This document shows, piece after piece, positions 9,761 to 55,076 of a stretch of DNA of 64,000 nt. The notes below the pieces were generated by a model. It was not told where the DNA came from. It worked only from the letters and a program-made list of their open reading frames with translations, and made no database searches. How positions within the stretch are numbered: position 1 is the stretch's first letter; each line of letters begins with the position of its first letter. The position numbers and the translations under genes were made by a program. This DNA comes from Macrostomum lignano (taxonomy: Eukaryota), in assembly GCA_002269645.1 (NCBI GenBank), contig NIVC01001523.1:1-64000 (forward strand). The letters are read 5' to 3'.

Positions 9761-9887
9761 CCTGTTAGAACTGCGATCGGATATTCGATAGTGCACTGTT
9801 GCTGGGGAAGTTTCGCTTTAGTGAAGTGACTAAAGTGACTTAGGTGACTAATCTAAAATTTCCAAGTTGATTTTTGTTTTGCTTTTC

Positions 9888-10532
9888 ATGAGTCAATCTG
9901 TCATCATGGCAACAGCTCCACGCGGCGGAAGAGGCGGCAGCGGCTTGTCTCCACAGAAGCGGCAGCCGCAGCTGGCTCCGACCGCATCGCCTCTGCTGTC
10001 AATCTCTCAACGGCCAGCTGGCTCTGCGCCGTCCACCGTGTCGCCAGCTGCCGCGGCGTCCAGACGGCGTCAACAGGCATCTCAGCCCGCCGCCTCGCCT
10101 GCCTCGGCCTCGTCAACGTCTCGCAGCAGCGGACTTGACAGCGGCATCGGCAGCGCCAGACAGACGTCAGCAGCGACCGGCGCTTCCGCCGCAGGTCCAG
10201 CGACGCCACGCCGGGAGGCTCCCAACGAACTGCTAATGGAATTCGTCGAATGCGTTATGACTAAAGATTTTAATAACGCGGCAAAACTATGCGAAATGAT
10301 TCTGCTGTACGAGCCTAACAATCTGGAGGCGCTGCAGTTCAGAGCCGTCATCTCAGACAGGCTGCTGCTGGATCAGCTGAGCTCTGGCAACGAAGATGAC
10401 GACGATGACGACACCGAGGATGGCGATGATAGCGACGATGACGACGAAGACGATGACGATGATCAAGAGGATGGAGAAGCTGGAACCGAAGAGGACGAAG
10501 GATTGGGCAGCGATTCTAATAGAAATCCTTGA
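9888..10532 (+). CDS. ERICH2: Glutamate-rich protein 2 homolog (single coding exon; start at ATG 9888 or 9906)
   Basis: APNELLMEFVECVMTKDFNNAAKLCEMILLYEPNNLEALQF resembles the ERICH2 core as recalled (APxELxxEFxxxVMxxDxxxAxKLCxMILxYEPxNxEAxxF) and is followed by an acidic D/E tail. Confidence 0.8.
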   Translation: MSQSVIMATAPRGGRGGSGLSPQKRQPQLAPTASPLLSISQRPAGSAPSTVSPAAAASRRRQQASQPAASPASASSTSRSSGLDSGIGSARQTSAATGASAAGPATPRREAPNELLMEFVECVMTKDFNNAAKLCEMILLYEPNNLEALQFRAVISDRLLLDQLSSGNEDDDDDDTEDGDDSDDDDEDDDDDQEDGEAGTEEDEGLGSDSNRNP

Positions 10533-11645: not shown

Positions 11646-11685
<40 letters not shown>

Positions 11686-11750
11686 CAGACAGATAGATAG
11701 ATAGATAGACCGATAGATAGATAGATAGATAGATAGATTGATAGATAGAC

Positions 11751-11801
<51 letters not shown>

Positions 11802-11913
11802 CAGATAGATAGGTAGATAGGTAGATAGATAGATAGATAGATAGGTAGATAGATAGATAGATAGGTAGATAGGTAGATAGATAGATAGGTAGATAGATAG
11901 ATAGGTAGATAGG

Positions 11914-11944
<31 letters not shown>

Positions 11945-11969
11945 GTAGATAGATAGATAGATAGATAGG

Positions 11970-12021
<52 letters not shown>
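11644..12021. repeat. (GATA)n microsatellite
   Basis: Direct observation. Confidence 0.95.
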
Positions 12022-12022
<1 letters not shown>

Positions 12023-21279: not shown

Positions 21280-22900
21280 CATGTTGATAATCTCATCCCT
21301 AAGAGCCATGCTAACGATATCTCATTCTTAAGAAACATGACAATGATAATCTCAACCCTCTAAACTATGCCAATGATAATCTCATCCCTGAGAACAATGG
21401 CAATGATAATCTCATCCATGAGAACCATGCCAATGATAATCTCATCCCTGAGAACAATGGCAATGATAATCTCATCCCTGAGAACCATGCCAATGATAAT
21501 CTCATCCCTGAGAACCATGCCAATGATAATCTCATCCATGAGAACCATGATAATCTCATCCCTGAGAACAATGCAAATGATAATCCCATCCATGAGAACC
21601 ATGCCAATGATAATCTCATCCATGAGAACAATGCCAATGATAATCTCATCCCTGAGAACAATGCAAATGATAATCTCATCCATGAGAACCATGCCAATGA
21701 TAATCTCATCCCTGAGAACAATGGCAATGATAATCTCATCCCTGAGAACAATGCAAATGATAATCTCATCCATGAGAACCATGCCAATGATAATCTCATC
21801 CCTGAGAACAATGGCAATGATAATCTCATCCATGAGAACAATGCCAATGATAATCTCATCCATGAGAACAATGCCAATGATAATCTCATCCCTGAGAACA
21901 ATGGCAATGATAATCTCATCCATGAGAACAATGGCAATAATAATCTCATCCATGAGAACAATGCCAATGATAATCTCATCCATGAGAACCATGCCAATGA
22001 TAATCTCATCCCTGAGAACAATGGCAATGATAATCTCATCCATGAGAACAATGCCAATGATAATCTCATCCATGAGAACAATGCAAATGATAATCTCATC
22101 CATGAAAACCATGCCAATGATAATCTCATCCCTGAGAACAATGGCAATGATAATCTCATCCATGAGAACCATGCCAATGATAATCTCATCCATGAGAACA
22201 ATGCCAATGATAATCTCATCCATGAGAACAATGCAAATGATAATCTCATCCATGAAAACCATGCCAATGATAATCTCATCCCTGAGAACAATGGCAATGA
22301 TAATCTCATCCATGAGAACAATGGCAATGATAATCTCATCCATGAGAACAATGGCAATGATAATCTCATCCATGAGAACAATGGCAATGATAATCTCATC
22401 CATGAGAACAATGCCAATGATAATCTCATCCATGAGAACCATGCCAATGATAATCTCATCCCTGAGAACAATGGCAATGATAATCTCATCCCTGAGAACT
22501 ATGCCAATGATAATCTCATCTATGAGAACCATGATAATCTCATCCCTGAGAACAATGGCAATGATAATCTCATCCATGAGAACCATGATAATCTCATCCC
22601 TGAGAACAATGGCAATGATAATCTCATCCATGAGAACCATGATAATCTCATCCCTGAGAACAATGCCAATGATAATCTCATCCATGAAAACCATGCCAAT
22701 GATAATCTCATCCCTGAGAACAATGGCAATGATAATCTTATCCATGAGAACAATGCCAATGATGATCTCATCTTTATTGAGAACTTCGGCAATGCGAAAT
22801 AAGAATCTCATCTCATAAGAATCTCAATCTCATCTAGGCAATGATAATGTCTTTATTGAGAACTTCGGCAATGAGAAATAAGAATCTCATCTCTCAGATC
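21280..22900. repeat. 30 bp minisatellite (gataatctcatccctgagaacaatggcaat)
   Basis: About 50 copies; source of the 483-aa ORFs on both strands. Confidence 0.95.
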
Positions 22901-25429: not shown

Positions 25430-27165
25430 TTATCCTCTCTCCCTCCATCATCTCTCCCTCCCTCATCTCTCCCTCCATCATCTTTCCCTCCATCATCTCT
25501 CCGTCCCTCATCTCTCCCTCCATCATCTCTCCGTCACTCATCTCTCCCTCCATCATCTCTCCCTCCATCATCTCTCCGTCCATCATCTCTCCGTCCCTCA
25601 TCTCTCCCTCCATCATCTCTCCCTCCATCATCTCTCCCTCCATCATCTCTCCCTCCATCATCTCTCCCTCCCTCATCTCTCCCTCCATCATCTCTCCCTC
25701 CATCATCTCTCCCTCCATCATCTCTCCGTCCCTCATCTCTCCCTCCATCATCTCTCCCTCCATCATCTCTCCCTCCATCATCTCTCCCTCCATCATCTCT
25801 CCCTCCATCATCTCTCCGTCCATCATCTCTCCGTCCCTCATCTCTCCCTCCATCATCTCTCCCTCCATCATCTCTCCGTCACTCATCTCTCCCTCCATCA
25901 TCTCTCCCTCCATTATCTCTCCCTCCATCATCTCTCCCTCCATCATCTCTCCGTCCCTCATCTCTCCCTCCATCATCTCTCCCTCCATCATCTCTCCCTC
26001 CATCATCTCTCCCTCCATCATCTCTCCGTCCATCATCTCTCCGTCCCTCATCTCTCCCTCCATCATCTCTCCCTCCCTCATCTCTCCCTCCATCATCTCT
26101 CCCTCCATCATCTCTCCGTCCCTCATCTCTCCCTCCATCATCTCTCCGTCCATCATCTCTCCCTCCATCATCTCTCCCTCCATCATCTCTCCGTCCCTCA
26201 TCTCTCCCTCCATCATCTCTCCGTCCATCATCTCTCCGTCCCTCATCTCTCCCTCCATCATCTCTCCCTCCCTCATCTCTCCCTCCATCATCTCTCCCTC
26301 CCTCATCTCTCCCTCCATCATCTCTCCCTCCATCATCTCTCCGTCCCTCATCTCTCCCTCCATCATCTCTCCGTCCCTCATCTCTCCCTCCATCATCTCT
26401 CCCTCCCTCATCTCTCCCTCCATCATCTCTCCCTCCATTATCTCTCCCTCCATCATCTCTCCCTCCATCATCTCTCCGTCCCTCATCTCTCCCTCCATCA
26501 TCTCTCCCTCCATCATCTCTCCCTCCATCATCTCTCCCTCCATCATCTCTCCGTCCATCATCTCTCCGTCCCTCATCTCTCCCTCCATCATCTCTCCCTC
26601 CATCATCTCTCCCTCCATCATCTCTCCCTCCATTATCTCTCCCTCCATCATCTCTCCCTCCATCATCTCTCCGTCCCTCATCTCTCCCTCCATCATCTCT
26701 CCCTCCATCATCTCTCCCTCCATCATCTCTCCGTCCCTCATCTCTCCCTCCATCATCTCTCCGTCCCTCATCTCTCCCTCCATCATCTCTCCCTCCCTCA
26801 TCTCTCCCTCCATTATCTCTCCCTCCATCATCTCTCCGTCACTCATCTCTCTCTCCATCATCTCTCCCTCCATCATCTCTCTCCCTCCCTCATCTCTCCG
26901 TCCCTCATCTCTCCGTCCCTCATCTCTCCGTCCCTCATCTCTCTCTCCATCATCTCTCCGTCCCTCATCTCTCCCACCATCATCTCTCCCTACCTCATCT
27001 CTCCGTCCCTCATCTCTCCCTCCATCATCTCTCCGTCCCTCATCTCTCCCTCCATCATCTCTCCCTACCTCATCTCTCTGTCCCTCGTCTCTCCCTCCCT
27101 CATCTCTCCGTCCCTCATATCTCCCTCTCATCTATCCCTCCCTCCCGCCCTCATCTCTCCCTCCT
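25430..27165. repeat. 15 bp CT-rich minisatellite (ctctccctccatcat)
   Basis: More than 100 copies; source of the HHLSL/MMEGE pseudo-ORFs. Confidence 0.95.
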
Positions 27166-27266
27166 GAATTATCCTACATGAATTTATGAACTCAAAGCCG
27201 CTTCTATATGAAAATTGTTGCCACATCAACCGATGTCCCACTCCCACCTCTTCCACACTCCCTAAG

Positions 27267-27743
27267 CCTCAACCATCACCCGCCGGAGGACCCGCCTGCG
27301 ACCACAACGACATCGTGAACTTGAATGTCGGCGGTCGGCACTTCAGCACAACCCGGGGTACCCTTTGCCGCGACCCCGACTCCATGCTGGCTGCCATGTT
27401 CGGCGGCCGCTTTCTGCCCGGCGTGCGCGACAGCGACGACCGCGTCTTCATCGACAGAGACGGCGATGTGTTCTGTCACGTGATCAACTACCTGAGATCC
27501 ATGCGGCTGCAGGTCTGTCTGTCTGTGTGTCTGTGTGTCTGTCTGCCTGTCTGTTTGTGTGTCTGTCTGTGTCTGTCTGGCTGTGTGTCTGTCTGTCTGT
27601 GTGTCTTTCTGTGTCTGCCTGTCTCTGTGTCTTCCTGTCTGTGTGTCTGCCTGTCTGTGTGTCTGTCTGTGTGTGTGTGTGTCTGTCTGTCTGTCTGTGT
27701 GTCTGCCTGTCTGTGTGTCTGTGTGTCTGTCTGTGTGTGTGTG

Positions 27744-27774
<31 letters not shown>

Positions 27775-30700
27775 GTGTGTGTGTGTGTCTGTCTGTCTGT
27801 CTGTGTATCTGTGTGTCTGTCTCCTATCTACCTGTCTCCATATCTACCTGTCTCCATATCTACCTGTCTCCATATCTACCTGTCTCCATATCTACTTGTC
27901 TCCATATCTACTTGTCTCCATATCTACCTGTCTCCATATCTACCTGTCTCCATATCTACCTGTCTCCATATCTACCTGTCTCCATATCTACCTGTCTCCA
28001 TATCTACCTGTCTCCATATCTACCTGTCTCCATATCTACCTGTCTCCATATCTACCTGTCTCCATATCTACCTGTCTCCATATCCACCCCCAGGTTCCGG
28101 AGAACTTTGCCGACCGGGCCAGACTGCTTGCTGAAGCTGAATACTTCGGCCTGCGCCATTTGCAGGTGAGATTTCAGCTGATATTGTGAAACGATAAATT
28201 GTCTAATAAGCGAGAGGTTTCATAGCATGGACTGTCAATCAAAACCTGAGTGGTACTCTACTCCCCCGGCATGTGTACATGCACAGACAGACCCCAGACC
28301 GTTTGGGGCGGACTGGGGCGGTAAGTTGCGGTCAAACGAAGACCACCCAGAGCTGGGGGGGGGGGTCGAGAAGGGCGAGAGAAGTGAGGATCGGGGAGAG
28401 TTTTGGACTTTGGGGGAAAATGGGAAGAATTATTTTCAAGCTTCGCCTCCCTTCCCCGATCCCGCTAGCCAACCAACCCAGGGCTGAATTTCCCGCGTCC
28501 CTTCTCCCCTCTCACCGCCTCCTTTGCCTTCCCAGCCCCTCCTCAGCCCTAAGTCCATCCCACCCTGCCAAGACTCGGCTTCAGCGCTGCAAGCCCTCCC
28601 TGTTTCTGGCAAGTTGCCAAGCTGTTTAAAAAGCAGTTAACCCGCACTTTTCTACCAAAGCTGGATACGATCTAAGATTGACAAAGGGGAGAGGGGCAGT
28701 TGCCGCTTGGCAACTCGCTCTGCACTCCATCTGAGTAGATGGGTCGGTGAGCTCGAACTCGAACAGAACTCAAGGAGACAGCCGGTCAACTATTAAACAT
28801 TTATTGTTCATATTGATTATATTATTGCTATACTAGTAGTTTAAATTTGTTTATTAATAAACCAAAAAAGCATTTTGCGACAAGGTGAGAAGAGGTCATG
28901 CAGTTTGATGAAAACATGTTTTTTAATTGCTCATTCATGACTGAAATTAATCATTGTATATGAGCTTCATCTGATGCTGTTTATGAGCTTCATCTGATGC
29001 TGTTTATGAGCTTCATCTGATGCTGTTTATGAGCTTCATCTGATGCTGTTTATGAGCTTCATCTGGTGCTGTTTATGAGCTTCATCTGATGCTGTTTATG
29101 AGCTTCATCTGATGCTGTTTATGAGCTTCATCTGATGCTGTTTATGAGCTTCATCTGATGCTGTTTATAAGCTTGATCTGATGATGTTTATGAGCTTGAT
29201 CTGATGCTGTTTATGAGTTTCATCTGATGCTGTTTATGAGCTTGATCTGATGCTGTTTATGAGCTTGATCTGATGCTATATATGAGCTTCATCTGATGCT
29301 GTTTATGAGCTTGATCTGATGCTGTTTATGAGCTTCATCTGATGCTGTTTATGAGCTTGATCTGATGCTGTTTATGAGCTTCATCTGATGCTGTTTATGA
29401 GCTTCATCTGATGCTGTTTATGAGCTTGATCTGATGCTGTTTATGAGCTTGATCTGATGCTATATATGAGCTTGATCTGATGCTGTTTATGAGTTTCATC
29501 TGATGCTATTTATGAGTTTAATCTGATGCTATTTATGAGCTTCATCTGATGCTGTTTGTGAGCTTCATCTGATGATGTTTATGAGCTTGATCTGATGCTG
29601 TTTATGAGCTTGATCTGATGCTGTTTATGAGCTTGATCTGATGCTGTTTATGAGCTTCATCTGATGCTGTTTATGAGCTTGATCTGATGCTGTTTATGAG
29701 CTTGATCTGATGCTGTTTATGAGTTTCATCTGATGCTATTTATGAGCTTCATCTGATGCTGTTTGTGAGCTTCATCTGATGATGTTTATGAGCTTGATCT
29801 GATGCTGTTTATGAGCTTGATCTGATGCTTTTTATGAGCTTCATCTGATGCTGTTTATGAGCTTGATCTGATGCTGTTTATGAGCTTGATCTGATGCTGT
29901 TTATGAGTTTCATCTGATGCTATTTATGAGTTTAATCTGATGCTATTTATGAGCTTCATCTGATGCTGTTTGTGAGCTTCATCTGATGATGTTTATGAGC
30001 TTGATCTGATGCTGTTTATGAGCTTGATCTGATGCTGTTTATGAGCTTCATCTGATGCTTTTTATGAGCTTCATCTGATGCTGTTTATAAGCTTGATCTG
30101 ATGATGTTTATGAGCTTGATCTGATGCTGTTTATGAGTTTCATCTGATGCTGTTTATGAGTTTCATCTGATGCTGTTTATGAGCTTTATCTGATGCTGTT
30201 TATGAGCTTGATCTGATGCTATATATGAGCTTCATCTGATGCTGTTTATGAGCTTGATCTGATGCTGTTTATGAGCTTGATCTGATGCTGTTTATGAGCT
30301 TCATCTGATGCTGTTTATGAGCTTCATCTGATGCTGTTTATGAGCTTCATCTGATGCTGTTTATGAGCTTGATCTGATGCTGTTTATGAGCTTGATCTGA
30401 TGCTATATATGAGCTTCATCTGATGCTGTTTTTGAGCTTGATCTGATGCTGTTTATGAGCTTGATCTGATGCTATATATGAGCTTCATCTGATGCTGTTT
30501 ATGAGCTTGATCTGATGCTGTTTGTGAGCTTCATCTGATGATGTTTATGAGCTTGATCTGATGCTGTTTATGAGCTTCATCTGATGCTGTTTATGAGCTT
30601 CATCTGATGCTTTTTATGAGCTTCATCTGATGCTGTTTATGAGCTTGATCTGATGCTGTTTATGAGTTTCATCTGATGCTATTTATGAGCTTCATCTGAT

Positions 30701-31352
30701 GCTGTTTGTGAGCTTCATCTGACCCCGTCATTCGTATTAGTTTTTATTAGAATCTCAAAATTACCTGACACCAACTGTGACCTGGCCAATTCCTCAGGAG
30801 CTGCTCACCAGCCACCGCTCCGTCGAGCAGCACTCGACAGCAAAGCGATTCGTGGAGCTCTGGCTGATGGAGTCGGCGCCCAGCTGCCTGGAGCAGTTCT
30901 ACCATCCGCACTACGCCAAGACAAAAACTGTGGCCAGAATCAGCGGCCCCGAAGCCGTCATCCGCCGTCTGGAACTCGACTGCACCTGCCAGAGAGAGGA
31001 CTCAAAGTTGGCGAGTACGCCAACCGAGCGCTCCCAGATGGACAGGTGTCGAACGATGCGTCTGGAGCTGCAGGACAATCAGGACAAGTTGAACTACCTC
31101 GCCGAGCTGTGCAGAATTGGCGGCAGAATTGTCAGCCACAGCAGCAGCATGACGATTGACAGCCAGCCAAGTCCACCCTGCCATCGCAGCTTCGAACGCT
31201 ACCTGCTCGAGTTCAGCTTTGTTGATCCCTCCGCTGAGCAGAAGGAGAATGACGGCGCTGGCGCTACTCAGGTCTGCGGCGACTGCGTGGGAGCCCGGCT
31301 GCCCTTGGGGTCACTTATGGTTGACAAGGCGGTGCCCATTGTGATTGATTGA
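27267..31352 (+). CDS. KCTD-family BTB/T1-domain protein; exons about 27267-27512 (5' end uncertain, genomic ATG at 27186), 28094-28165, 30798-31352
   Basis: [31 protein letters not shown]...[17 protein letters not shown]...[10 protein letters not shown] is a classic KCTD T1 domain. Phase-0 GT-AG joins. Confidence 0.88.
27513..28083. repeat. (GTCT/GT)n microsatellite followed by a 16 bp repeat (ctacctgtctccatat); together they make up KCTD intron 1
   Basis: Direct observation. Confidence 0.92.
28962..30722. repeat. 23 bp minisatellite (gagcttcatctgatgctgtttat)
   Basis: About 76 copies in KCTD intron 2. Confidence 0.95.
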
Positions 31353-42225: not shown

Positions 42226-42706
<481 letters not shown>

Positions 42707-43005
42707 GATAGAATGACTTTCGCACGCCATCGCAGCCATTACTTAGCTAAATAATTATTCCAACAGTGAACTGATTGCAGGACAAGGATAAATGGATAGA
42801 TCCCCATCCCATTGTATTCCTGCTCCGCATTAATGCGTGTAACTGAATGATTCTAAAATTAGATTCGCTGTCGATGACAGAAGCAGCAGAGCTCGTACTG
42901 AATCAATAGATAATAGTCGCGCGAAAAAAACAGTCGGGATGACAGACAGACAAAATAGCAGGCGACGTCAACAAGCGGCTCCTAGATTAGGATATATCAA
43001 AAAAG

Positions 43006-43963
43006 AGTGGACCAGACAGACACAGAGTGGACCAGACAGACACAGAGTGGACCAGACAGACACAGAGTGGACCAGACAGACACAGAGTGGACCAGACAGA
43101 CGCATACTGGACCAAACAGACGCATACTGGACCAGACAGACACAGAGTGGACCAGACAGACACAGAGTGGACCAGACAGACGCATAGTGGACCAGACAGA
43201 CGCATAGTGGACCAGACAGACACAGAGTAGACCAGACAGACGCATAGTGGACCAGACAGACACAGAGTGGACCAGACAGACGCATAGTGGACCAGACAGA
43301 CACAGAGTGGACCAGAGTGATATAAAGTGGACCAGACAGACACAGAGTGGACCAGACAGACACAGAGTGGACCAGACAGACACAGAGTGGACCAGAGTGA
43401 TATAAAGTGGACCAGACAGACACAGAGTGGACCAGACAGACACAGAGTGGACCAGACAGACACAGAGTGGACCAGAGTGATATAAAGTGGACCAGACAGA
43501 CACAGAGTGGACCAGACAGACACAGAGTGGACCAGACAGACACAGAGTGGACCAGACAGACTCAGAGTGGACCAGACAGACACAGAGTGGACCAGACAGA
43601 CACAGAGTGGACCAGACAGACACAGAGTGGACCAGACAGACACAGAGTGGACCAGACAGACACAGAGTGGACCAGACAGACACAGAGTGGACCAGACAGA
43701 CACAGAGTGGACCAGACAGACACAGAGTGGACCAGACAGACACAGAGTGGACCAGACAGACACAGAGTGGACCAGACAGACACAGAGTGGACCAGACAGA
43801 CTCAGAGTGGACCAGACAGACTCAGAGTGGACCAGACACACACAGAGTGGACCAGACAGACACAGAGTGGACCAGACAGACACAGAGTGGACCAGACAGA
43901 CACAGAGTGGACCAGACAGACACAGAGTGGACCAGACAGACTCAGAGTGGACCAGACAGACAG
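43006..43963. repeat. 20 bp minisatellite (gtggaccagacagacacaga)
   Basis: About 48 copies. Confidence 0.95.
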
Positions 43964-45989: not shown

Positions 45990-46792
45990 TTAGACAGTAG
46001 ATTGAGACACCTGCTAGATATCAGGTTGAGACACCTGTTAGATATTAGACTGAGACACCTGTTAGATATCAGACTGAGACACCTGTTAGATATTAGATCG
46101 AGACACCTGTTAGATATCAGACTGAGACACCTGCTAGATATCAGGTTGAGACACCTGTTAGATATTAGACTGAGACACCTGTTAGATATCAGACTGAGAC
46201 ACCTGTTAGATATTAGATCGAGACACCTGTTAGATATCAGACTGAGACACCTGTTAGATATTAGATCGAGACACATGTTAGATATGAGAGTGAGACACCT
46301 GTTAGATATCAGACTGAGACACCTGTTAGATATTAGATCGAGACACATGTTAGATATGAGAGTTAGATACCTGTTAGATATGAGAGTGAGACACCTGTTA
46401 TTAATAGATATGAGAGTGAGACACCTGTTAGATATCAGACTGAGACACCTGTTAGATATTAGACTAAGACACCTGTTAGACATGAGAGTGAGACACCTGT
46501 TAGATATCAGGTTGAGACACCTGTTAGATATTAGACTGAGACACCTGTTAGATATTAGACTGAGACACCTGTTAGATATTAGACTGAGACACCTGTTAGA
46601 TATTAGACTGAGAAACCTGTTAGATATTAGACTGAGACACCTGTTAGATATTAGATCGAGACACATGTTAGATATGAGAGTGAGACACCTGTTAGATATG
46701 AGAGTGAGACACCTGTTAGATATCAGACTGAGACACCTGTTAGATATTAGACTGAGACACCTGTTAGATATTAGACTGAGACACCTGTTAGA
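45990..46792. repeat. 24 bp minisatellite (gagacacctgttagatattagact)
   Basis: About 33 copies; core ACCTGTTAGA. Confidence 0.93.
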
Positions 46793-46917
46793 TGCTATAA
46801 TAAGAATCCCTGCTAGATCGATCATGAAATGCCATAATTTTTCAGTCGCCAAGCAGTCGCAATCCAGCAGGAATATGAAACAGTTAAAAAACAAACAATA
46901 AACAAATTTCAGTCGCT

Positions 46918-49900
46918 ATGCGATCATTTCTTCGCGACCGACAGCGACTGAACGCGGCGGCGGCGGCGACAGCAGCGGCGACTTCTTCGCAGCTGTCGAG
47001 CGCAGAAGTCGGCGACGAAGCCGACATGTCGAGGCGGCGCGCGTCCTGCTTCCAGCACGGCAATCACGGAGGTGACGATAGCGATGAAGAGCAGAGGCTG
47101 ATCAAGGTAACAGTTTCTTTATTCCGGCATTGATTTTTGTTTATCTTGCCTTGTAAAATTTGTTATAATTTACGAATACGAAAGGAATTCTAATTGAAAT
47201 TCTCTTAAAAGGTTTACAAAAGTTAAATGAAGCAAAACCATCTCGAAAGACAGATTGTCTACATCAGCTCCGGCTTGTTGAAAGAGGCGATGGCGTCTGG
47301 ATGAGGACTGAATGCTGGAGAGACTGGCTAAGGATGTCCAGCAGTTGAGGTTTCTCCACTTGTCGAGGCTTGATCAGTTTGCAACACGTGTCCATATTCA
47401 CCTGGTGCCACCTGTTAAAGGTCCAGAAGCTTCGCTTGTGTGAAGTCTAGTGACCAAGGAAGTCAACCAAGGAAGTTGACCATGTGGTCAACGTGCTAAG
47501 GCGCAGTGCTGGCGCACAGGGGTACACTGAATACACTGGCGCTTATGGGAAAAATCCGACCTTCTGGCAGTGCTATTGAATATCTCGACGGCCCGGAAGG
47601 CTGGCGAATTGATTCTCGTTTGACAAGGTTGCGCAACAAAAGTTAGCCCTAAAGAAAGTTATTTGATTTCGTGTGCCTGGGTTTCTCCGAAATGGCTTGG
47701 TACTTGTATCCCTACTGATAAAACGAGCCATTTAAGATTTTCTAGGAAACAAAGTCTTATTTCTAAGAAATAAGAAACAAAATTAATTTAAAAAGTGGCA
47801 CGCCATCGACGAGTCGCAGTCCTACACCCAGACATCGTAAAAACAAGTTAAAAAGACGTTAAAGAAGTCAACACGCCCAAATTCTAGCAGTTTTTGAATG
47901 CCTAATTAAGGACTAAGGCCGATTGACGGACTTTTTTTGCTTTTATTCATTCCCGGCTTAATCTTTTCTTTACAAGTTGAACCTACAAAAAGAAAAGGTC
48001 AACTGGTTCGTGCTTTGTCAGAGATACTCGTAGTTGCACATTTTTAGACTACTCTATTTTCCAAAAATTGGAAGCATTAATTAAAACAAAGTTTAGAGTT
48101 TTTAAAATTTAAACTTCATATCACATCGTGACATCTATACTGGCTAATTAAATCTATTTGCAAATATATGAGATTCAATTTTGATAGTTTATGTTTCAAT
48201 TTACTTAAAAATTAAACTTTTGTCTATCATAAAAAACAAAAAATCTGAGTCGAAAAAAGTGAATTGAAAAATACAAACTCAAACAAATTATGTACAACAA
48301 ATGGCACCTCAGACTAACAAGGGATACTTAGGTGATTCACCTCTCAAACAGGTTACACTGTCCAATCAAACGGGTTACACTGTCCAATCAAACGGGTTAC
48401 ACTGTCCAATCAAACAGGTTACACTGTCCAATCAAACGGGTTACACTGTCCAATCAAACGGGTTACACTGTCCAATCAAACGGGTTAAACTGTCCAATCA
48501 AACGGGTTACACTGTCCAATCAAACTGGTTACACTGTCCAATCAAACTGGTTACACTGTCCAATCAAACTGGTTACACTGTCCAATCAAACAGGTTACAC
48601 TGTCCAATCAAACGGGTTACACTGTCCAATCAAACAGGTTACACTGTCCTATCAAACGGGTTACACTGTCCAATCAAACGGGTTACACTGTCCAATCAAA
48701 CGGGTTACACTGTCCACAAACGGGTTACACTGTCCAATCAAACGGGTTACACTGTCCAATCAAACGGGTTACACTGTCCAATCAAACGGGTTACACTGTC
48801 CAATCAAACGGGTTAAACTGTCCAATCAAACGAGTTAAACTGTCCAATCAAACTGGTTACACTGTCCAATCAAACTGGTTACACTGTCCAATCAAACTGG
48901 TTACACTGTCCAATCAAACTGGTTACACTGTCCAATCAAACGGGTTAAACTGTCCAATCAAACGGGTTACACTGTCCAATCAAACAGGTTACACTGTCCA
49001 ATCAAACAGGTTACACTGGATTTCAAGCTCAATGCAGTGTGTTTCTACACGCCCGAAATAATTCGAAAACCTCTTCCAACCCTCACTGAAGCGTCAAGTG
49101 TACATCTGCGTGGTGTTCATGAAAATCGGCGAAATTGACACCATCAAGGAGCAATTCGCTGCAGACGTGCTGATCAAAGCCAAATGGAGAGAACCGGAGC
49201 TTGACCATATGAACGCTCAGGAGGGGAGGCTTGTGAGTTATGAAAATCCTATTTCTCAAGTTCCTACCTCTCATGTTTCCCACATCCTAATTCCCATATC
49301 ACAAGTTTCGCACACTCTAATTCCCATACCACAAATTTCCCACACTTTAATTCCCAATCCTACAAGTTTTCCTACACCCCAATACCATCCCACAAGTTTT
49401 CCATACCCTAATTATCATCCCACAAGTTTCCTACCCCCTAAATCCCATATTACAAGTTTCCCACACCCTAATTCCCATCCTAAAAGTTTTCCTACACGCT
49501 AATTCCCATACCACAAGTTTATAAAAAAACTAAAGACTTAGGACTTATAAAAAAAGTCCTACGATAAACTTAGCTGAACTTTCTGCGTCCACTCCAGCAA
49601 TACGACTGGGCTAATAGCTGGACCCCGAAGCTCTACATCGAGAACACCATTGGTGAGAGCAAGGAGAACGTCTACCAGATGATCTCCTTCAACGAAGTCG
49701 GTCACGCGTTTTTATTCGAGAAGCGGAGAGTGTCCGGTGTATTCTTGGAAAATCTCGAGCTCAACCATTTCCCGTTTGATGTCCAGGTGAGGATGCGATT
49801 TGGGTAAGGAGTCAGGTGAATGATTGGGTCAGGAGTCAGGTGAGCTATTGGGTCAGGAGTCAGGTGAATGATTAGGTCAGGAGTTAGGTGAGCGATTGGG

Positions 49901-52900
49901 TCAGGAGTCAGGTGAGCTATTGGGTCAGGAGTCAGGTGAGCGATTGGGTCAGGAGTCAGGTGAATGATTGGGTCAGGAGTTAGGTGAGCGATTGGGTCAG
50001 GAGTCAGGTGAATGATTGGGTCAGGAGTCAGGTGAATGATTGGGTCAGGAGTCAGGTGAATGATTGGGTCAGGAGTTAGGTGAGCGATTGGGTCAGGAGT
50101 CAGGTGAATGATTGGGTCAGGAGTCAGGTGAATGATTGGGTCAGGAGTCAGGTGAGCTATTGGGTAAGGAGTCAGGTGAATGATTGGGTCAGGAGTCAGG
50201 TGAATGATTGGGTCAGGAGTCAGGTGAATGATTGGGTCAGGAGTCAGGTCAGCTACTGGGTCAGGAGTCAGGTGAGCTATTGGGTCAGGAGTCAGGTGAA
50301 CTATTGGGTCAGGAGTCAGGTGAACTATTGGGTCAGGAGTCAGGTGAGCTATTGGGTCTAGAGTCAGGTGAGCGATTGGGTCAGGAGTCAATTGAACTAT
50401 TGGTGAGGACTCGGGAATCGGGTGAATGATTGGGTCAGGAGTCATGTGAGCGATTTGATAAGAATTCATGAGACAAATCACGATAAAAAAGCGCTCAGGT
50501 ATATAGTTTCTATTTCAGATCATTACTAACAAATCCGACAGCAGGCCTCCATGAAACGCACCAGCGGATTGGGATCTGGCTAATTATATATCATAGTTCC
50601 AGTTGTGCTCCATTAAAAAAATACCCCAGTCAGCAGGTAACTGAAACTCCAGACAGGGAGATAGAGAGACATTGGGAAGAGATTTTTTTAGTCGGGAAAT
50701 GTGAACGTTTTTAGATGATTTGCCAATTTATTTGATGGGACTTTACGTGCACCAGTAGTTAGTCGCAAATATGATCATATATTAGATTGCCCAGATTCGT
50801 AATTAAGTCATGCATCAGCAATCGGGCTGAGAAGTTTTGGCGCAATTAGAGTATGGGTCCGTCCTAAAATATATGATATAGGGATTTATAAGGTGTCTAA
50901 TGGCTTTGCAATAGATAACCAGGCGCTTCGTCTCTTGGGCAGCACCCAAAGACATTCCCAAAGACAGCGCTCCCTCCCAAAGACAGCGTCCCTTTCCCAA
51001 AGACAGCGTCCCTTTCTCAAAGACAGCGTCCCTTTCCCAAAGACAGTGTCCCTTTCTCAAAGACAGCGTCCCTTTCTCAAAGACAGCGTCCCTTTCTCAA
51101 AGACAGCGTCCCTTTCTCAAAGACAGCGTCCCTTTCCCAAAGACAGCGTCCCTTTCTCAAAGACAGCGTCCCTTTCCCAAAGACAGCGTCCCTTTCTGAA
51201 AGACAGCGTCCCTTTCCCAAAGACAGCCTCCCTTTCTCAAAGACAGCGTCCCTTTCCCAAAGACAGCGTCCCTTTTTCAAAGACAGCGTCCCTTTCCCAA
51301 AGACAGCGTCCCTTTCTCAAAGACAGCGTCCCTTTCTCAAAGACAGCGTCCCTTTCTCAAAGACAGCGTCCCTTTTACAAAGACAGCGTCCCTTTCTCAA
51401 AGACAGAGTCCCTTTCTCAAAAACAGAGTCCCTTTCTCAAAGACAGCGTTCCTTTTGCAAAGACAGCGTCCCTTTCTCAAAGACAGCGTCCCTTTCCCAA
51501 AGACAGCGTCCCTTTCTCAAAGACAGCGTTCCTTTCTCAAAGACAGCGTCCCTTTCTCAAAGACAGCGTCCCTTTCTCAAAGACAGCGTCCCTTTCTCAA
51601 AGACAGCGTCCCTTTTACAAAGACAGTGTCCCTTTCTCAAAGACAGAGTCCCTTTCTCAAAAGCAGCGTCCCTTTCTCAAAGACAGCGTTCCTTTTGCAA
51701 AGACAGCGTCCCTTTCCCAAAGACAGCGTCCCTTTCTCAAAGACAGCGTCCCTTTCTCAAAGACAGCGTCCCTTTCCCAAAGACAGCGTCCCTTTCCCAA
51801 AGACAGCGTCTCTTTCCCAAAGACAGCGTCCCTTTCCCAAAGACAGCGTCCCTTTCCCAAAGACAGCGTCCCTTTCTCAAAGACAGCGTCCCTTTCCCAA
51901 AGACAGCGTCCCTTTCTCAAAGACAGCGTCCCTTTCTCAAAGACAGCGTCCCTTTCCCAAAGACAGCGTCCCTTTCTCAAATACAGCGTCCCTTTCTCAA
52001 AGACAGCGTCCCTTTCTCAAAGACAGCGTCCCTTTCTCAAAGACAGCGTCCCTTTCCCAAAGACAGCGTCCCTTTCTCAAAGACAGCGTCCCTTTCCCAA
52101 AGACAGCGTCCCTTTCTCAAAGACAGCGTCCCTTTCCCAAAGACAGCGTCCCTTTCTCAAAGACAGCGTCCCTTTCCCAAAGACAGCGTCCCTTTTGCAA
52201 AGACAGCGCTCCTTCTCAAAGAGCCTCTTCACGGCAATCGGTTCTAGAACCAGAATAAATTCGAGTTCTAGAACCAGAACCAGTGTGATTGTGAAATGAG
52301 GAGCTTCGAACCCATTTATGTTTGACAGTCTTTACAATTTAATTTTGTCGTTCTTTGACTTTGTTTCCTCTTGGATATGACAAGAAACGGAATAATTATA
52401 CAACAATAATAGAAAATTGACGATTTCAAATATATTTTACTGTTAAAGTGTAAACATGACAACGGTTCGAGAAAATTTCTCGAACCATATTCCAGAACCT
52501 GAACCATGTTCCGGAACTGATTCTGTTTTTCGAACCATCGATATGAAGAGCGTCGAACCCGTTCGGAACTGGTTCCGTTTTTCGAACCGGCGATATGAAG
52601 AGGCTCAAAGACAGCGCTCCCTCCCAAAGACAGCGTCCTTTCGCAAAGACAGCAACCCTTACCAAATGCAGCACCCCTCCCTTACGACAGCAGCCCTTTT
52701 CAATGACACGGTTGTTACCTAAGGACAGCACAAAAAACTTTTGATATGAGAAGAAGCAAAAACCACTTTCTAAATATTTCCAACACTATAGTCCACCTCT
52801 ATTCGTGTTTCTCAGGACTTAACTATCACTGTGGCTTCGAATCTGTCGTCGGCAGAAATTCGTTTAGTGAACGACCCAGATGAGCCGCACAGAATCAATA

Positions 52901-54560
52901 AGCAATCTTTTATCGGTGAGTCGTATTTGAAACGATATTAGCTATCAATTAAAATTCAGTTGAGCTCCAGTTTACCCTGATGCGATTGGGTTGCAGCTCT
53001 GAGCTGCGCTAGAAATACAGGACCCTACACAGTGCCAGCACTGTACAAGGCCACCTTACTGCAACGGGTCCAGAGTATTTCCATATGCAGGTACATGTAA
53101 ACGCGTTTACCTGCAAAGATTCAGCTTGCTTGTGTACTGATCGTTGCGTGCGCTTTTATAACGCACGTTAGGATCCGGCCCTCCTGGATGCACAAGCAAA
53201 CCCCAAATCGACATGCAACCACCCTGACATGTTCATGTCAAACTGTACCACTTTGGCACGAACACAACTTGAACATTTAAATCAATCATTTTGCAAATGA
53301 GCAGATGAGCAAGAGTGGTTCCTGTACAAGCACATCGAGACGGAGCAGAAAGAGCTGGCATGCGAGTACACGGACCCTGGCTCGATCCGGCCAGCCCTGT
53401 CTGTCAAGTGCAGAGCGGCTCGGAGACCGGCTTATTTTATTTGGAATATTTTTCTGGTCACGGTAAGATGCTGATTGTTTGGGTGTTATCAATCACTGTC
53501 TAGCTAAAATGACTCTGACTCTCACACCACACGACCCCAATCTGGCGTTGTGGTGCGATTAACGCCAGCAGGACCAGTGTACACATGCCTGACGATTAAA
53601 AGTAACACCCTGTGCGAGAGTGTGCATGAGTGCAGTGCCTGAGTTCAGTATTGGCGCACCTAAATGTGCTCAGGAGGGAAGAATTGCCTCAGCGCTAGTG
53701 GTCCAGGACGATGTCTCCCGAAGCTCTGCGCCAGCTCAGCCGTCCTGTTTATATTATTATTTTAAATAATATTAGTAACTGTTGCTCGAAAATATATTCG
53801 TCCGTGAGGCTAGAGTGTGCTTATATTTATTTTATAAGCGGAACAATGGCTTTTTAGAGTCGAGAAGAGTCTCAATAAAATCTATATACAAATTCGGGGG
53901 CTATTTAGGCACTTAATTAACTCTCTCAATATGAATTTACTTCATCACAATTGCATTCAATTAATTCTCTCATCGCCTACTGCAGTTCCTAATCTGCTCC
54001 CTGTCGCTAGTGACATTCGCGGTGAAGCGCGATCTGCCTCAGAACCGGCTCCAGCTGACGTTCACTCTCGTGCTCACTTTGGTCGCCTTTAAATTTGTCG
54101 TCAATCAATGCCTGCCTAAGATATCCTACTTAACTTATTTGGTAAGTAGCAAATTGAGCGTTTTTTCTAGTAAATTTATCATTTTTACTCAAAATAAATA
54201 ATTTCAATATTTTTCGGACCAGGACAAGTACGTGATCAGTAGTTTGTTTATCCTGACGCTGATCTGTCTCTGGCATGGACTCATAGTAGTTATTGACAAG
54301 ATCATTCTGGAGCACTTCGGCATGGTTTGGGACAACCTTGAGACCTACGTCATCATTGGCATGGCGTTCAGCTATGTGGCTTACAATGTTGGCTTTGTAA
54401 TCATGATCTTTTCTGTGGTAAGTTACACTGAAGACACAAAGATCGAATGAATACTACTGTAGTTGTAGTATGATAACTTTCCTAATATTGTCGTTCGCAT
54501 TTCAAACCCCAGGCATGCAAGAGACGGAGAATCATGAAACAAAAGGACAGAGAGTACACG
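46918..54560 (+). CDS. Cys-less (Pro-loop) pentameric ligand-gated ion channel subunit; exons 46918-47106, 49092-49232, 49598-49786, 52816-52915, 53305-53462, 53986-54141, 54223-54417, 54513-54560; last exon uncertain
   Basis: IGEIDTIKEQFAADV...WREPEL, WTPKLYIEN, LELNHFPFDVQDL (Pro-loop with no cysteines) and RRPAYFIWNIF (pre-M1/M1). M2 is RLQLTFTLVLTLVAF with L9', followed by LPKISYLTYLDKY and M3/M4 with a very short loop. All splice phases are consistent. Confidence 0.9.
48345..49018. repeat. 22 bp minisatellite (gttacactgtccaatcaaacgg)
   Basis: About 30 copies in pLGIC intron 1. Confidence 0.95.
49240..49520. repeat. Degenerate 30 bp repeat (cccataccacaagtttcccacactctaatt)
   Basis: Imperfect periodicity in pLGIC intron 2. 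Confidence 0.7.
49800..50455. repeat. 24 bp minisatellite (gagtcaggtgaatgattgggtcag)
   Basis: About 27 copies starting next to the exon 3 donor. Confidence 0.93.
50950..52220. repeat. 20 bp minisatellite (aagacagcgtccctttctca)
   Basis: About 63 copies; a few more units resume after the MITE at 52610. Confidence 0.95.
52221..52606. mobile_element. PIF/Harbinger-type MITE, copy A
   Basis: TIRs GAGCCTCTTCA / TGAAGAGGCTC, with a 3-bp TSD (AAA) from the host repeat unit ttctc-aaa-gacagcg. Internal GTTC..GAAC palindromes. Confidence 0.75.
53520..53750 (+). mobile_element. 5'-truncated, diverged SINE sharing the central body of the 310/15480 family
   Basis: The blocks aatctggc..gtgcgattaacgcc, agtgtacacatgcctgacgatt, tgctcagg and tgcgccag are colinear with the reverse complement of copies 1 and 2. 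Confidence 0.6.
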
Positions 54561-54827
54561 GTAAGCTGATCCAGGCTACATAATAACATATACATGTACT
54601 AATTGTTAAGTCCCTGTGTTTGGTAAGGGTTAATGATAGCACCTTTCAGTAGGTACGTATAGGTGACAGGGTTAATGATACTATCTTCGATCAAGCACCT
54701 GTCAATAAGTCTGTAGGTATGAGGGTTAATATGATACTATCCTTAGGCGCATGTCTGCTAGTCTGTATAGGTTACGGGGGGCTAGTACTATCCTCCCAAT
54801 GAAGTGGTGCCTGTAAATACTGTCCAG

Positions 54828-55076
54828 TTTACTAAAATTGGCAATGTAGGAGCGAGTGAAAATGCAGATGCGCTCAAAAGGAATGCGAGCGAAACGGATG
54901 CTGCAACAGACGCATCAGCTGCACGAGGTGAAGGAGAACGGACAGTCGCCTGCGGTTGCATTCATATAAACGTAAAAACAATGACTTTTTTCTCAATTCC
55001 CAAAATCTTATTCTGCATGTACTTCGTAATTTTGATAGTATATGTACCTGCTTTTACACGATGTACATGTAACTAA
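54828..55076 (+). CDS. Candidate terminal exon of the Cys-less pLGIC (FTKIGNVGASENADALKRN...)
   Basis: tactgtccag| is a phase-0 acceptor followed by a GC/Ala-rich open frame. An alternative acceptor at 54649 would give an immediate TAG. Confidence 0.4.
   Translation, partial: FTKIGNVGASENADALKRNASETDAATDASAARGEGERTVACGCIHINVKTMTFFSIPKILFCMYFVILIVYVPAFTRCTCN

What the first reader, a model, noticed from the sequence alone, without database searches (positions are those of the whole stretch)
46918..54560. Bacterial-style Cys-less (Pro-loop) pentameric channel in an animal
Seen: loop 7 reads FLENLELNHFPFDVQDL with neither cysteine of the Cys-loop. The M3-M4 linker is only about 18 aa, and the M1-M2 selectivity segment is KRDLPQNR rather than PAR (anion) or GEK (cation). 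Known: absent Cys-loop cysteines and a short M3-M4 loop are features of prokaryotic GLIC/ELIC and of a poorly characterised invertebrate Cys-less clade, whose ligands are largely unknown. Here the gene is intron-rich, so it is a real nuclear gene and not contamination.
Basis: partly seen in the sequence, partly recalled or inferred. Interest (0 to 1): 0.7.

Follow-up and report, generated by a model that had tools for sequence, protein, structure and literature searches.

The report
Cys-less flatworm channel, possibly inside-out
This is an intact, intron-rich flatworm gene for a subunit of an already described but uncharacterised animal family of "Cys-less" pentameric ion channels, and the family's sequences suggest, without proving, that its ligand-binding domain faces the cell interior rather than the outside.

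Summary
[quoted passage not shown] Loop 7 reads FLENLELNHFPFDVQDL, with E and L where the Cys-loop cysteines would be. The M3-M4 link is 17 aa and the pre-M2 segment is KRDLPQNR.

The closest relative is Macrostomum lignano (95% identity over the C-terminal 172 aa). The gene belongs to the "Cys-less Pro-loop" clade of spiralian animals already described by Jaiteh 2016 and Johnson 2023. None of 229 relatives has the cysteine pair. Three intron positions are shared with a mollusc orthologue. It is therefore neither contamination nor a recent cysteine loss, and as stated it is a new member of a known kind.

I found the following feature in no paper. The whole family lacks a signal peptide and carries hydrophilic N-extensions (median 90 aa). 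It has a conserved polybasic helix after M4 ([KR][KR]RRxMxxKD[RK]E[YH]). It holds about 15 Lys/Arg on the N/C side of the membrane against 3 on the other side, where bacterial relatives have 4 against 4. It has no conserved glycosylation site.

These features predict an N-in/C-in topology, with the ligand-binding domain in the cytosol. That is inference only, at roughly 50%. Ligand and ion selectivity remain unknown.

The parts
46918..47106 (+). Exon 1: start codon plus a hydrophilic N-terminal extension (aa 1-63: basic start, Ala-rich stretch, acidic linker). It contains no convincing signal peptide.
   Evidence: ORF with a GT donor, phase 0. There is an in-frame stop 33 nt upstream and a possible (trans-)splice acceptor tttcag at 46907-46912. 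The exon is not supported by homology because the region is variable. Maximum 8-residue Kyte-Doolittle mean is 1.49.
49092..49232 (+). Exon 2: beta1-beta2 of the ligand-binding domain, including the family-invariant KIGEIDTIKEQ loop.
   Evidence: tblastn matches from cestode, nemertean, Macrostomum and annelid proteins; invariant columns F72 K74 G76 E77 T80 K82 E83.
49598..49786 (+). Exon 3: loop A (WTPKLYIEN) through the first 15 residues of loop 7 (FLENLELNHFPFDVQ, nt 49742-49786). The phase-0 intron falls after Q173.
   Evidence: The intron position is shared with Aplysia P0038 and M. lignano P0092.
52816..52915 (+). Exon 4: end of loop 7 (DL, with L175 at the second 'Cys' position) and beta7-beta8.
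53305..53462 (+). Exon 5: the conserved DEQEW motif, the beta9-beta10 hairpin (variable loop C), the basic pre-M1 segment KCRAARRP, and the first part of M1.
   Evidence: C242 is 97% conserved; R246 is invariant.
53986..54141 (+). Exon 6: rest of M1, the KRDLPQNR segment (54025-54048), the M2 pore helix (54046-54102; N-1', Q2', T6', L9', A13', F16') and the M2-M3 loop.
   Evidence: M. lignano fragment P0123 starts exactly here.
54223..54417 (+). Exon 7: M3 (54229-54294), the 17-aa acidic M3-M4 link (54295-54345) and M4 (54346-54417).
54513..54560 (+). Exon 8: a 48-nt mini-exon encoding the conserved juxtamembrane motif ACKRRRIMKQKDREYT.
   Evidence: R381 98%, R382 88%, M384 86%, K387 91%, D388 92%. 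The AlphaFold2 model shows a helix continuous with M4 at pLDDT about 90.
54850..54969 (+). Exon 9: the distal basic C-terminal tail and the stop codon.
   Evidence: 87% identical to the C-terminus of M. lignano P0123.
48344..49018 (.). Minisatellite in intron 1 (22-bp unit, about 31 copies).
   Evidence: Tandem Repeats Finder.
49800..50455 (.). Minisatellite in intron 3 (24-bp unit, about 27 copies).
   Evidence: Tandem Repeats Finder.
50955..52222 (.). Minisatellite in intron 3 (20-bp unit, about 64 copies).
   Evidence: Tandem Repeats Finder.

Best explanation
The locus is an intact gene of a Macrostomum-type flatworm. [quoted passage not shown] The pore helix has the same pore-facing residues as ELIC (Q2', T6', L9', A13', F16') but a neutral N at -1' instead of a glutamate. 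Family membership is clear, and the gene has been in animal genomes for a long time. INFERRED (about 50-55%): the protein inserts with its N- and C-termini in the cytosol. The 'extracellular' domain of textbook receptors would then sit on the cytoplasmic face of the plasma membrane or of an organelle. M1 would act as an N-in signal anchor behind a basic pre-M1 segment. The short acidic M1-M2 and M3-M4 links would face outward or into a lumen. The conserved polybasic helix continuing from M4 would lie at the inner leaflet beside the domain. On this reading the channel would be gated by a cytosolic ligand or ion acting on the beta-sandwich and transmitted through the conserved loop 2 / loop 7 / M2-M3 interface to the L9' gate. 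The ligand is unknown. The invariant acidic clusters GEID, ExxE and DEQE near the domain-membrane interface make a divalent cation or pH a candidate, which is speculation. Ion selectivity is undetermined because the usual -1' charge is absent.
For: Gene and fold: nine GT-AG exons; homologues at E down to 7e-172; AlphaFold2 mean pLDDT 82.5, above 90 in the beta-sandwich; Foldseek hits GABA-A, ELIC and GlyR at probability 1.00. Clade: 0 of 229 relatives carry the cysteine pair; 202 clusters at 50% identity score E<=1e-30; three intron positions are shared across phyla. Topology: (a) There is no signal peptide. The maximum 8-residue hydrophobicity in the first 40 aa has a median of 1.29 in 114 family proteins with an N-extension of at least 25 aa, and 1.8% reach 2.4; in 110 bacterial ELIC-like relatives the median is 2.92 and 84% reach 2.4. 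(b) N-extensions are hydrophilic, with a median of 90 aa, a 90th percentile of 260 and a maximum of 912 (the Aplysia protein has about 880 disordered residues). (c) Two transcript contigs have in-frame stops upstream of the ATG, so those N-termini are complete. (d) Lys+Arg counts are a median of 15 on the pre-M1 + M2-M3 + post-M4 side against 3 on the M1-M2 + M3-M4 side; bacterial relatives have 4 against 4. (e) The post-M4 tail has a median of 44 aa with 8 Lys/Arg in its first 25 residues, against 0 aa and 0 in bacteria, and its motif is conserved from rotifers to molluscs. (f) There is no conserved N-glycosylation sequon (median 0 per domain), no disulphide pair, and one near-invariant unpaired Cys242. 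The positive-inside rule and the charge-difference rule for signal anchors (established knowledge, von Heijne; Hartmann) then predict N-in. None of the 15 papers listed for my inverted-topology query concerns pLGIC orientation. Jaiteh 2016 contains no occurrence of 'signal peptide'. The text of Johnson 2023 that I read does not discuss it.
Against: Every experimentally studied pLGIC has its ligand-binding domain outside the cell or in the periplasm, and no topology experiment exists for this family. The basic post-M4 residues could instead be structural: one helical face is conserved (R381, M384, K387/D388, Y391), and it might salt-bridge to the invariant loop-7 glutamates in a normal orientation. 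Some paralogues (Schistosoma, Paragonimus, a second Macrostomum gene) have long M3-M4 inserts of 59-121 aa ending in a basic pre-M4 segment that resembles the cytoplasmic MA helix of canonical receptors. A few proteins are known to translocate long N-terminal domains without a signal peptide (neuregulin-1; from my own knowledge). The window protein's own unverified exon 1 has a basic start followed by an Ala-rich stretch that loosely resembles a weak signal peptide. I had no dedicated topology or signal-peptide predictor, and I could not retrieve full-length canonical eukaryotic receptors as a control.
Confidence: 0.5

Rival explanations
1. It is the same gene and family but with the conventional orientation. 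The beta-sandwich would be extracellular, reached by an unconventional or weak signal or by N-tail translocation. The channel would be a surface receptor for an extracellular transmitter, amine, proton or ion, as ELIC is for GABA and cysteamine. The basic post-M4 helix would be an extracellular 'latch' packing on the domain.
For: All characterised pLGICs have this orientation. ELIC-like pore residues are present. One conserved face of the post-M4 helix suggests protein-protein packing, and AlphaFold2 models it confidently. Long, basic-ended M3-M4 inserts in some paralogues look like a canonical intracellular domain. Planarian homologues are reported in mechanosensory neurons with neuro-behavioural RNAi phenotypes (Ross 2018 as summarised in PMC9874803), which fits a conventional neuronal receptor.
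Against: There is no signal peptide in 98% of 114 full N-termini, against 84% positive in bacterial relatives. Complete transcripts have upstream stops. Hydrophilic N-extensions reach about 900 aa. Translocating 8-10 Lys/Arg just after M4 and 3-5 just before M1 goes against the positive-inside rule. There are no conserved glycosylation sites or disulphides.
Confidence: 0.4
2. It is a canonical Cys-loop receptor (GABA/Gly-like or nicotinic-like) that lost its cysteines recently, like the 'secondary' Cys-less channels of nematodes.
For: A family profile scores GABA-A gamma2 and GlyR only about 13-15 bits below ELIC. Some database names call relatives 'GABA receptor subunit'.
Against: E and L at the two positions are found in 217 and 218 of 229 relatives from at least six phyla, and none has the pair. 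There is no second Cys-loop. Published trees place the clade apart from canonical families (PMC4795631, PMC9874803). ELIC is the best solved-structure match with both the single sequence and the profile.
Confidence: 0.03
3. It is bacterial contamination or a recent horizontal transfer of an ELIC-like gene.
For: The best solved-structure hit is bacterial ELIC. The cysteines are absent and the M3-M4 link is short.
Against: The gene has eight spliceosomal introns with minisatellites typical of the surrounding genome. Intron positions are shared with a mollusc and a paralogue. Identity to ELIC is only about 20%, against 40-76% to animal proteins.
Confidence: 0.01
4. It is a decaying duplicate (pseudogene) in a genome known for duplicated genes.
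For: M. lignano carries at least three >90% identical copies of the C-terminal fragment. Exon 1 is not verified.
Against: The 431-codon frame is uninterrupted and all 16 splice sites are canonical. All family-invariant residues are retained. The protein is 95% identical to the Macrostomum copy.
Confidence: 0.05

Closest known systems
Metazoan 'Cys-less Pro-loop receptor' clade (Jaiteh, Taly & Henin 2016), including the schistosome 'Cys-less' LGICs (Johnson et al. 2023; Smp_336620, Smp_334630, Smp_135040)
   Same: Both lack the loop-7 cysteines and retain the FPxD motif. Neither has a second Cys-loop or a PAR/GEK motif. The distribution centres on spiralian animals. The window protein is 53% identical to the Schistosoma members over 64% of its length.
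   Different: The window protein belongs to the FPFDVQ subfamily, with Q rather than E at -2' and a 10-21 aa M3-M4 link. The schistosome proteins retrieved here are of the FPLDVQ type, with E at -2' and inserts of about 120 aa. Neither paper discusses signal peptides, the post-M4 motif or membrane orientation.
ELIC (Erwinia/Dickeya ligand-gated ion channel; e.g. PDB 2VL0, 8D67)
   Same: It is the best solved-structure match (69 bits with the single sequence, 84 bits with the profile). It has no Cys pair and a short M3-M4 link, and its pore-facing residues Q2', T6', L9', A13' and F16' are identical.
   Different: ELIC has a signal peptide, essentially no post-M4 tail, a glutamate just before M2 and balanced Lys/Arg counts (4 against 4). 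The window family has none of these features. ELIC is also prokaryotic and intronless.
GLIC and DeCLIC (other prokaryotic pLGICs)
   Same: They are Cys-less, share the fold and have a short M3-M4 link. DeCLIC shows that pLGICs can carry extra N-terminal domains and be controlled by Ca2+ (PMC9897478, listed).
   Different: Their similarity is weaker (about 40-43 bits). They are periplasm-facing and have signal sequences.
Canonical anionic Cys-loop receptors (GABA-A beta3/gamma2, GlyR alpha)
   Same: They share the overall fold (Foldseek E about 1e-18, TM-score about 0.55-0.72), the R0' and L9' residues, the pre-M1 Arg and the M2-M3 Pro.
   Different: They have the Cys pair, a signal peptide, N-glycans, the PAR motif and a long basic cytoplasmic M3-M4 domain, and they lack a basic post-M4 tail.
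'Secondary' Cys-less nematode channels (Dirofilaria immitis Q70GM3, C. elegans lgc-34)
   Same: They lack the first Cys-loop cysteines.
   Different: According to PMC4795631 and PMC9874803 they nest inside the anionic Cys-loop clade and keep the second Cys-loop. They are therefore not related to this clade by descent of the Cys-less state.

Membership tests
pLGIC / Pro-loop receptor superfamily | [quoted passage not shown] | tested here: met
   The AlphaFold2 model has 10 strands and then helices 248-271, 277-301, 307-339 and 344-420, with pLDDT 82.5. Foldseek gives probability 1.00 to GABA-A, ELIC and GlyR. Homologues carry Pfam PF02931 and PF02932.
pLGIC / Pro-loop receptor superfamily | Loop-7 [FY]PxD motif with the invariant proline, plus the pre-M1 Arg and the M2-M3 loop Pro at the domain interface | tested here: met
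   F168, P169, D171, R246 and P303 are invariant in 64 aligned sequences.
pLGIC / Pro-loop receptor superfamily | Pentameric assembly and ligand-gated ion conduction | not testable with these tools
   Only a monomer could be modelled, and there are no functional data for any clade member (PMC4795631, PMC9874803).
Canonical metazoan Cys-loop receptors | A disulphide-forming cysteine pair flanking loop 7 (C-x13-C) | tested here: not met
   E161 and L175 occupy these positions, and 0 of 229 relatives have the pair.
Canonical metazoan Cys-loop receptors | A cleavable N-terminal signal peptide and a glycosylated extracellular domain | tested here: not met
   Hydrophobicity of the N-termini is far below that of signal-bearing bacterial relatives. 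The median number of sequons per domain is 0 and none is conserved. No dedicated predictor was available.
Canonical metazoan Cys-loop receptors | A PAR (anion) or GEK/GER (cation) motif before M2 | tested here: not met
   The window has LPQNR; family consensus is P-3', Q-2', N-1', R0'.
Metazoan Cys-less Pro-loop clade (Jaiteh 2016; Johnson 2023) | Cys-less loop 7 with FPxD and no second Cys-loop | tested here: met
   There is no Cys pair in the beta9-beta10 region; only the single Cys242 is conserved.
Metazoan Cys-less Pro-loop clade (Jaiteh 2016; Johnson 2023) | Close sequence relationship to named members (Schistosoma, Capitella, Lottia, Crassostrea, Aplysia proteins) | tested here: met
   E-values range from 1e-85 to 1e-172 and identities from 40% to 76%.
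Metazoan Cys-less Pro-loop clade (Jaiteh 2016; Johnson 2023) | Monophyly apart from canonical Cys-loop families in a tree | not tested
   I could not retrieve full-length canonical sequences, so I rely on the published trees. My support is indirect: the PDB score ranking and the clade-wide E/L state.
Prokaryotic pLGICs (ELIC/GLIC type) | Cys-less loop 7 and an M3-M4 link of about 10-15 aa | tested here: met
   The link is 17 aa in the window, with a family median of 12 and a bacterial median of 14.
Prokaryotic pLGICs (ELIC/GLIC type) | A signal peptide, a C-terminus ending at M4, and a prokaryotic intronless gene | tested here: not met
   for the signal peptide and tail; eight introns.

The most novel reading that the evidence does not exclude
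The whole spiralian Cys-less family, with at least 200 clusters at 50% identity across flatworms, molluscs, annelids, nemerteans, brachiopods and rotifers, may be an 'inside-out' pLGIC. Its beta-sandwich domain, N-extension and polybasic post-M4 helix would be cytosolic. The channel would then sense an intracellular ligand or ion at the plasma membrane or on an organelle. That would be the first pLGIC lineage with inverted membrane orientation, and it would explain why the family dispensed with the disulphide, glycans and signal peptide.
Probability: 0.45. Interest if true: 0.85.

Novelty: new member of a known kind. Interest (0 to 1): 0.55.

Why it matters
The family is absent from vertebrates, insects and C. 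elegans, and its ligand, selectivity and biology are all unknown. Johnson 2023 proposed the family as an anthelmintic target, so a Macrostomum orthologue offers a safe laboratory model for working out what it does.

The larger point is the family-wide signature found here: no signal peptide, long hydrophilic N-extensions, a conserved polybasic post-M4 helix, a reversed Lys/Arg bias, and no glycosylation sites or disulphides. If that signature means the ligand-binding domain is cytosolic, the receptor superfamily best known for sensing extracellular transmitters would also contain intracellular sensors. It would also explain why bath-applied ligand screens would not deorphanise the family.

Tried and rejected
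1. My first exon-2 acceptor (49028) broke the frame; the acceptor at 49091/49092 restores it and matches homologues.

2. I searched for further pLGIC exons or tandem paralogues in the window with tblastn and found none.

3. I tried to obtain full-length canonical Cys-loop receptors as a control. I therefore built no tree of my own, and the only empirical control is the bacterial set.

4. A handful of family proteins have hydrophobic N-termini (P0063, P0117, P0054, P0076, P0044). On inspection they are truncated or old gene models in which beta1 falls in the first 40 residues, or they look like translated UTR or intron. They are not evidence for signal peptides.

5. The 'Cys-less' clade of the MolluscaGenes preprint is defined by loss of the YxCC loop-C motif within nicotinic-type receptors. 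It is probably a different group, so I did not use it.

6. I looked for planarian expression detail in the pou4-2 paper and found no mention of these genes.

7. Literature searches for inverted or cytosolic pLGIC topology returned nothing relevant.

8. I considered sequon depletion as evidence. A median of 0 sequons is compatible with chance in a domain of about 190 aa, so I cite only the lack of conserved sites.

9. ORF 2620-3183 had no match to any solved structure.

Full report
**1. The observation**

I read 46500-55000 and assembled a + strand gene of nine exons. They are 46918-47106, 49092-49232, 49598-49786, 52816-52915, 53305-53462, 53986-54141, 54223-54417, 54513-54560 and 54850-54969. 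Every internal boundary is AG/GT, the phases are consistent, and the product is 431 aa.

- Loop 7 reads FLENLELNHFPFDVQDL (aa 159-175), split by a phase-0 intron after VQ.
- Against the canonical C-x6-FPFD-x3-C spacing, the cysteine positions hold E161 and L175.
- The pre-M2 segment is KRDLPQNR (aa 273-280).
- The M3-M4 link is 17 aa. In the AlphaFold2 model only four residues (340-343) between the two helices are non-helical.

A ninth exon carries the last 39 codons, and it is confirmed by a Macrostomum lignano fragment (P0123). That fragment is 95% identical, begins exactly at exon 6 and ends at the same C-terminus. Exon 1 is supported only by ORF and splice logic.

**2. What it is**

- Sequence search of solved structures gives ELIC as best hit (3e-18), ahead of GlyR, a nicotinic subunit and DeCLIC at about 1e-10.
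- The AlphaFold2 model built on a 64-sequence alignment is confident (mean pLDDT 82.5, above 90 across the beta-sandwich).
- Foldseek matches GABA-A beta3, ELIC and GlyR chains at probability 1.00.
- The large protein database returns 256 relatives. These include cestodes (75-76% identity), a monogenean, nemerteans, molluscs, annelids, a brachiopod, rotifers and trematodes including Schistosoma. [quoted passage not shown]
- An exhaustive HMMER scan finds 202 clusters at 50% identity with E<=1e-30, out of 6546 pLGIC-like clusters at E<=1e-3.

The organism is Macrostomum lignano or a close relative. This fits the extraordinary minisatellite load of the window.

**3. Comparison with what is published**

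Jaiteh, Taly and Henin (2016, PMC4795631) described Cys-less 'Pro-loop' receptors in invertebrates. They form a Lophotrochozoa-dominated clade that groups with protist Cys-less channels and is separate from the canonical anionic and cationic clades. The paper noted that the biology of these channels is undocumented.

Johnson et al. (2023, PMC9874803) found eight such genes in schistosomes and noted the missing PAR/GEK motif and the missing second Cys-loop. They cited planarian homologues expressed in mechanosensory neurons, whose RNAi gives seizure-like movements.

The window gene is a member of this clade. None of 229 relatives with a recognisable loop 7 has the cysteine pair. The positions are E in 217 and L in 218, and both are invariant or nearly so in my 64-sequence alignment spanning six phyla.

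Three intron positions are shared by the window gene, a second Macrostomum paralogue and the Aplysia orthologue: after FPFDVQ, within M1 at VT|FLIC, and at LTY[LM]|DKY. This excludes contamination or recent transfer.

'Bacterial-style' needs tempering. With a family profile, ELIC leads GABA-A gamma2 and GlyR by only 13-15 bits.

**4. The pore**

M2 is almost invariant across the family. R0', L1', L7', L9', F14' and K15' are invariant and Q2', L3', F5' and T10' nearly so; T6' is the majority residue (54 of 64). The pore-facing residues Q2', T6', L9', A13' and F16' are identical to ELIC's. Where ELIC has a glutamate just before M2, the family has N at -1', Q (sometimes E or H) at -2' and P at -3'. 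The usual charge determinant is therefore missing. I do not think selectivity can be called from sequence.

**5. A family-wide feature I found in none of the papers I searched**

No member has a convincing signal peptide.

- In 114 family proteins with at least 25 residues before beta1, the maximum 8-residue Kyte-Doolittle mean within the first 40 residues has a median of 1.29, and 1.8% reach 2.4. In 110 bacterial ELIC-like relatives retrieved as a control the median is 2.92 and 84% reach 2.4. A 10-residue window gives the same separation.
- The few high scorers are truncated or dubious gene models.
- The N-extensions are hydrophilic, with a median of 90 aa and a maximum of about 900 aa in an Aplysia protein.
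- Two transcript-derived contigs carry in-frame stops upstream of the start codon, so those N-termini are complete.

After M4 the family carries a tail with a median of 44 aa, where bacterial relatives end essentially at M4. The tail opens with the conserved motif [KR][KR]RRxMxxKD[RK]E[YH], which in the window is encoded by a 48-nt mini-exon. AlphaFold2 models it as a straight continuation of the M4 helix at pLDDT about 90 up to residue 400.

Lys+Arg counts have a median of 15 on the pre-M1 + M2-M3 + post-M4 side against 3 on the M1-M2 + M3-M4 side, a net charge of +11 against -1. Aligned bacterial relatives have 4 against 4.

The domain has no conserved N-glycosylation sequon (median 0 per domain), no conserved cysteine pair and one near-invariant lone Cys242.

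**6. How it most likely works**

Two established rules apply. One is the positive-inside rule. The other is the charge-difference rule for the first signal-anchor, which acts together with the tendency of long or folded N-terminal domains to stay cytosolic. Both predict that M1 inserts N-in.

With four helices the C-terminus is then also cytosolic. The M2-M3 loop stays on the same side as the beta-sandwich, as the fold requires, and the short acidic M1-M2 and M3-M4 links face outward or into a lumen.

I therefore commit, at roughly even odds, to an inverted channel whose ligand-binding domain is cytosolic. It would be gated through the conserved loop 2 (KIGEIDTxKEQ), loop 7 and M2-M3 interface onto the L9' gate.

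What is shown is the fold, the clade, the gene structure and the sequence statistics. What is inferred is the orientation, the pentameric state and the gating. The identity of the ligand is speculation; the invariant acidic clusters GEID, ExxE and DEQE near the interface hint at a cation or pH.

**7. Evidence against, and the main rival**

- Every studied pLGIC faces outward.
- The conserved face of the post-M4 helix (R381, M384, K387/D388, Y391) could reflect packing against the invariant loop-7 glutamates in a normal orientation, rather than a topogenic signal.
- Paralogues with 59-121 aa M3-M4 inserts end those inserts in a basic segment reminiscent of the cytoplasmic MA helix.
- Rare proteins do translocate long N-domains without signal peptides.
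- The window protein's unverified exon 1 has a basic start plus an Ala-rich stretch that is weakly signal-like (maximum 8-residue mean 1.49).
- I lacked SignalP and DeepTMHMM, and I lacked a canonical eukaryotic control set.

I put the conventional orientation at about 0.4.

**8. Verdict**

The finding is real and correctly interpreted. As stated, however, it is a new member of a clade already in the literature.

Its value lies in two things. It provides an orthologue in a tractable, harmless flatworm, and it exposes a coherent, family-wide set of features that predict an unconventional membrane orientation. That prediction is cheap to test and would be surprising if confirmed.

Noticed in passing
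window 1-64000 (e.g. 810-1531, 21285-22772, 25432-27145, 28955-30722, 43004-43962, 45990-46793): The window is saturated with long minisatellite arrays. Tandem Repeats Finder returns 43 rows with score >=400, with periods mostly 14-47 bp and up to 114 copies. Each array has a different unit. Three arrays lie inside introns of the channel gene and one ends 125 bp upstream of its start codon. Most of the long 'ORFs' in the window are translations of these arrays.
   Followed up: partly
window 27186-27500 (+): An exon-like ORF encodes a BTB/POZ tetramerisation (T1-type) domain. The best solved-structure match is KCTD7 (2.5e-14), followed by SHKBP1, KCTD9, KCTD17 and KCTD5. The ORF then runs into a CT-rich repeat, so only the N-terminal part looks coding.
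   Followed up: partly
window 9867-10532 (+) and 2620-3183 (+): Two non-repetitive ORFs may be exons of other genes. The first has a Ser/Ala-rich start, a helical stretch (NELLMEFVECVMTKDFNNAAKLCEMILLYEPNNLEALQF) and a poly-Asp/Glu tail. The second had no match to any solved structure.
   Followed up: partly
window 46907-46917 (+): A tttcag acceptor-like site lies 5 nt before the start codon, with an in-frame stop 33 nt upstream. From my own knowledge, Macrostomum uses spliced-leader trans-splicing, so this may be a trans-splice or 5'-UTR acceptor.
   Followed up: no
related proteins P0218/P0261 (1160 aa), P0121 (592 aa), P0122 (1034 aa): Some relatives encode two or three complete subunits in one chain. 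P0218, from transcript-sized contigs, has three. P0122 is fused to a reverse-transcriptase-like N-terminus and is probably a gene-model artefact. A genuine concatenated subunit would be unusual.
   Followed up: no
related proteins P0061, P0054, P0092, P0088, P0175, P0195, P0182 (N-extensions): The FPLDVQ sister subfamily and more distant members share a predicted amphipathic helix in the N-extension. Examples are LDPTERLIEAIESLRDTISDNT, ISRLLIDLTNAVKENTQVL and LNDIRDLLVSIREYLTSNG. Mollusc orthologues of the window gene share an N-terminal M[TS]S[VI]AY[SN][FY]M motif. Both suggest functional, conserved N-terminal regions rather than cleaved leaders.
   Followed up: no
protein P0123 and cluster mates (M. 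lignano UniRef A0A1I8HD80, A0A1I8IIQ5, A0A1I8FLM4): The nearest database relatives are 172-aa fragments that UniRef labels as 'G_PROTEIN_RECEP_F3_4 / F1_2 domain-containing protein'. That is a misannotation of a pLGIC transmembrane half. Three >90% identical copies exist, which fits the duplicated M. lignano genome.
   Followed up: no
window 11646-12022 and 42226-42712: Two long (TAGA)n microsatellites of 94 and 122 copies.
   Followed up: no
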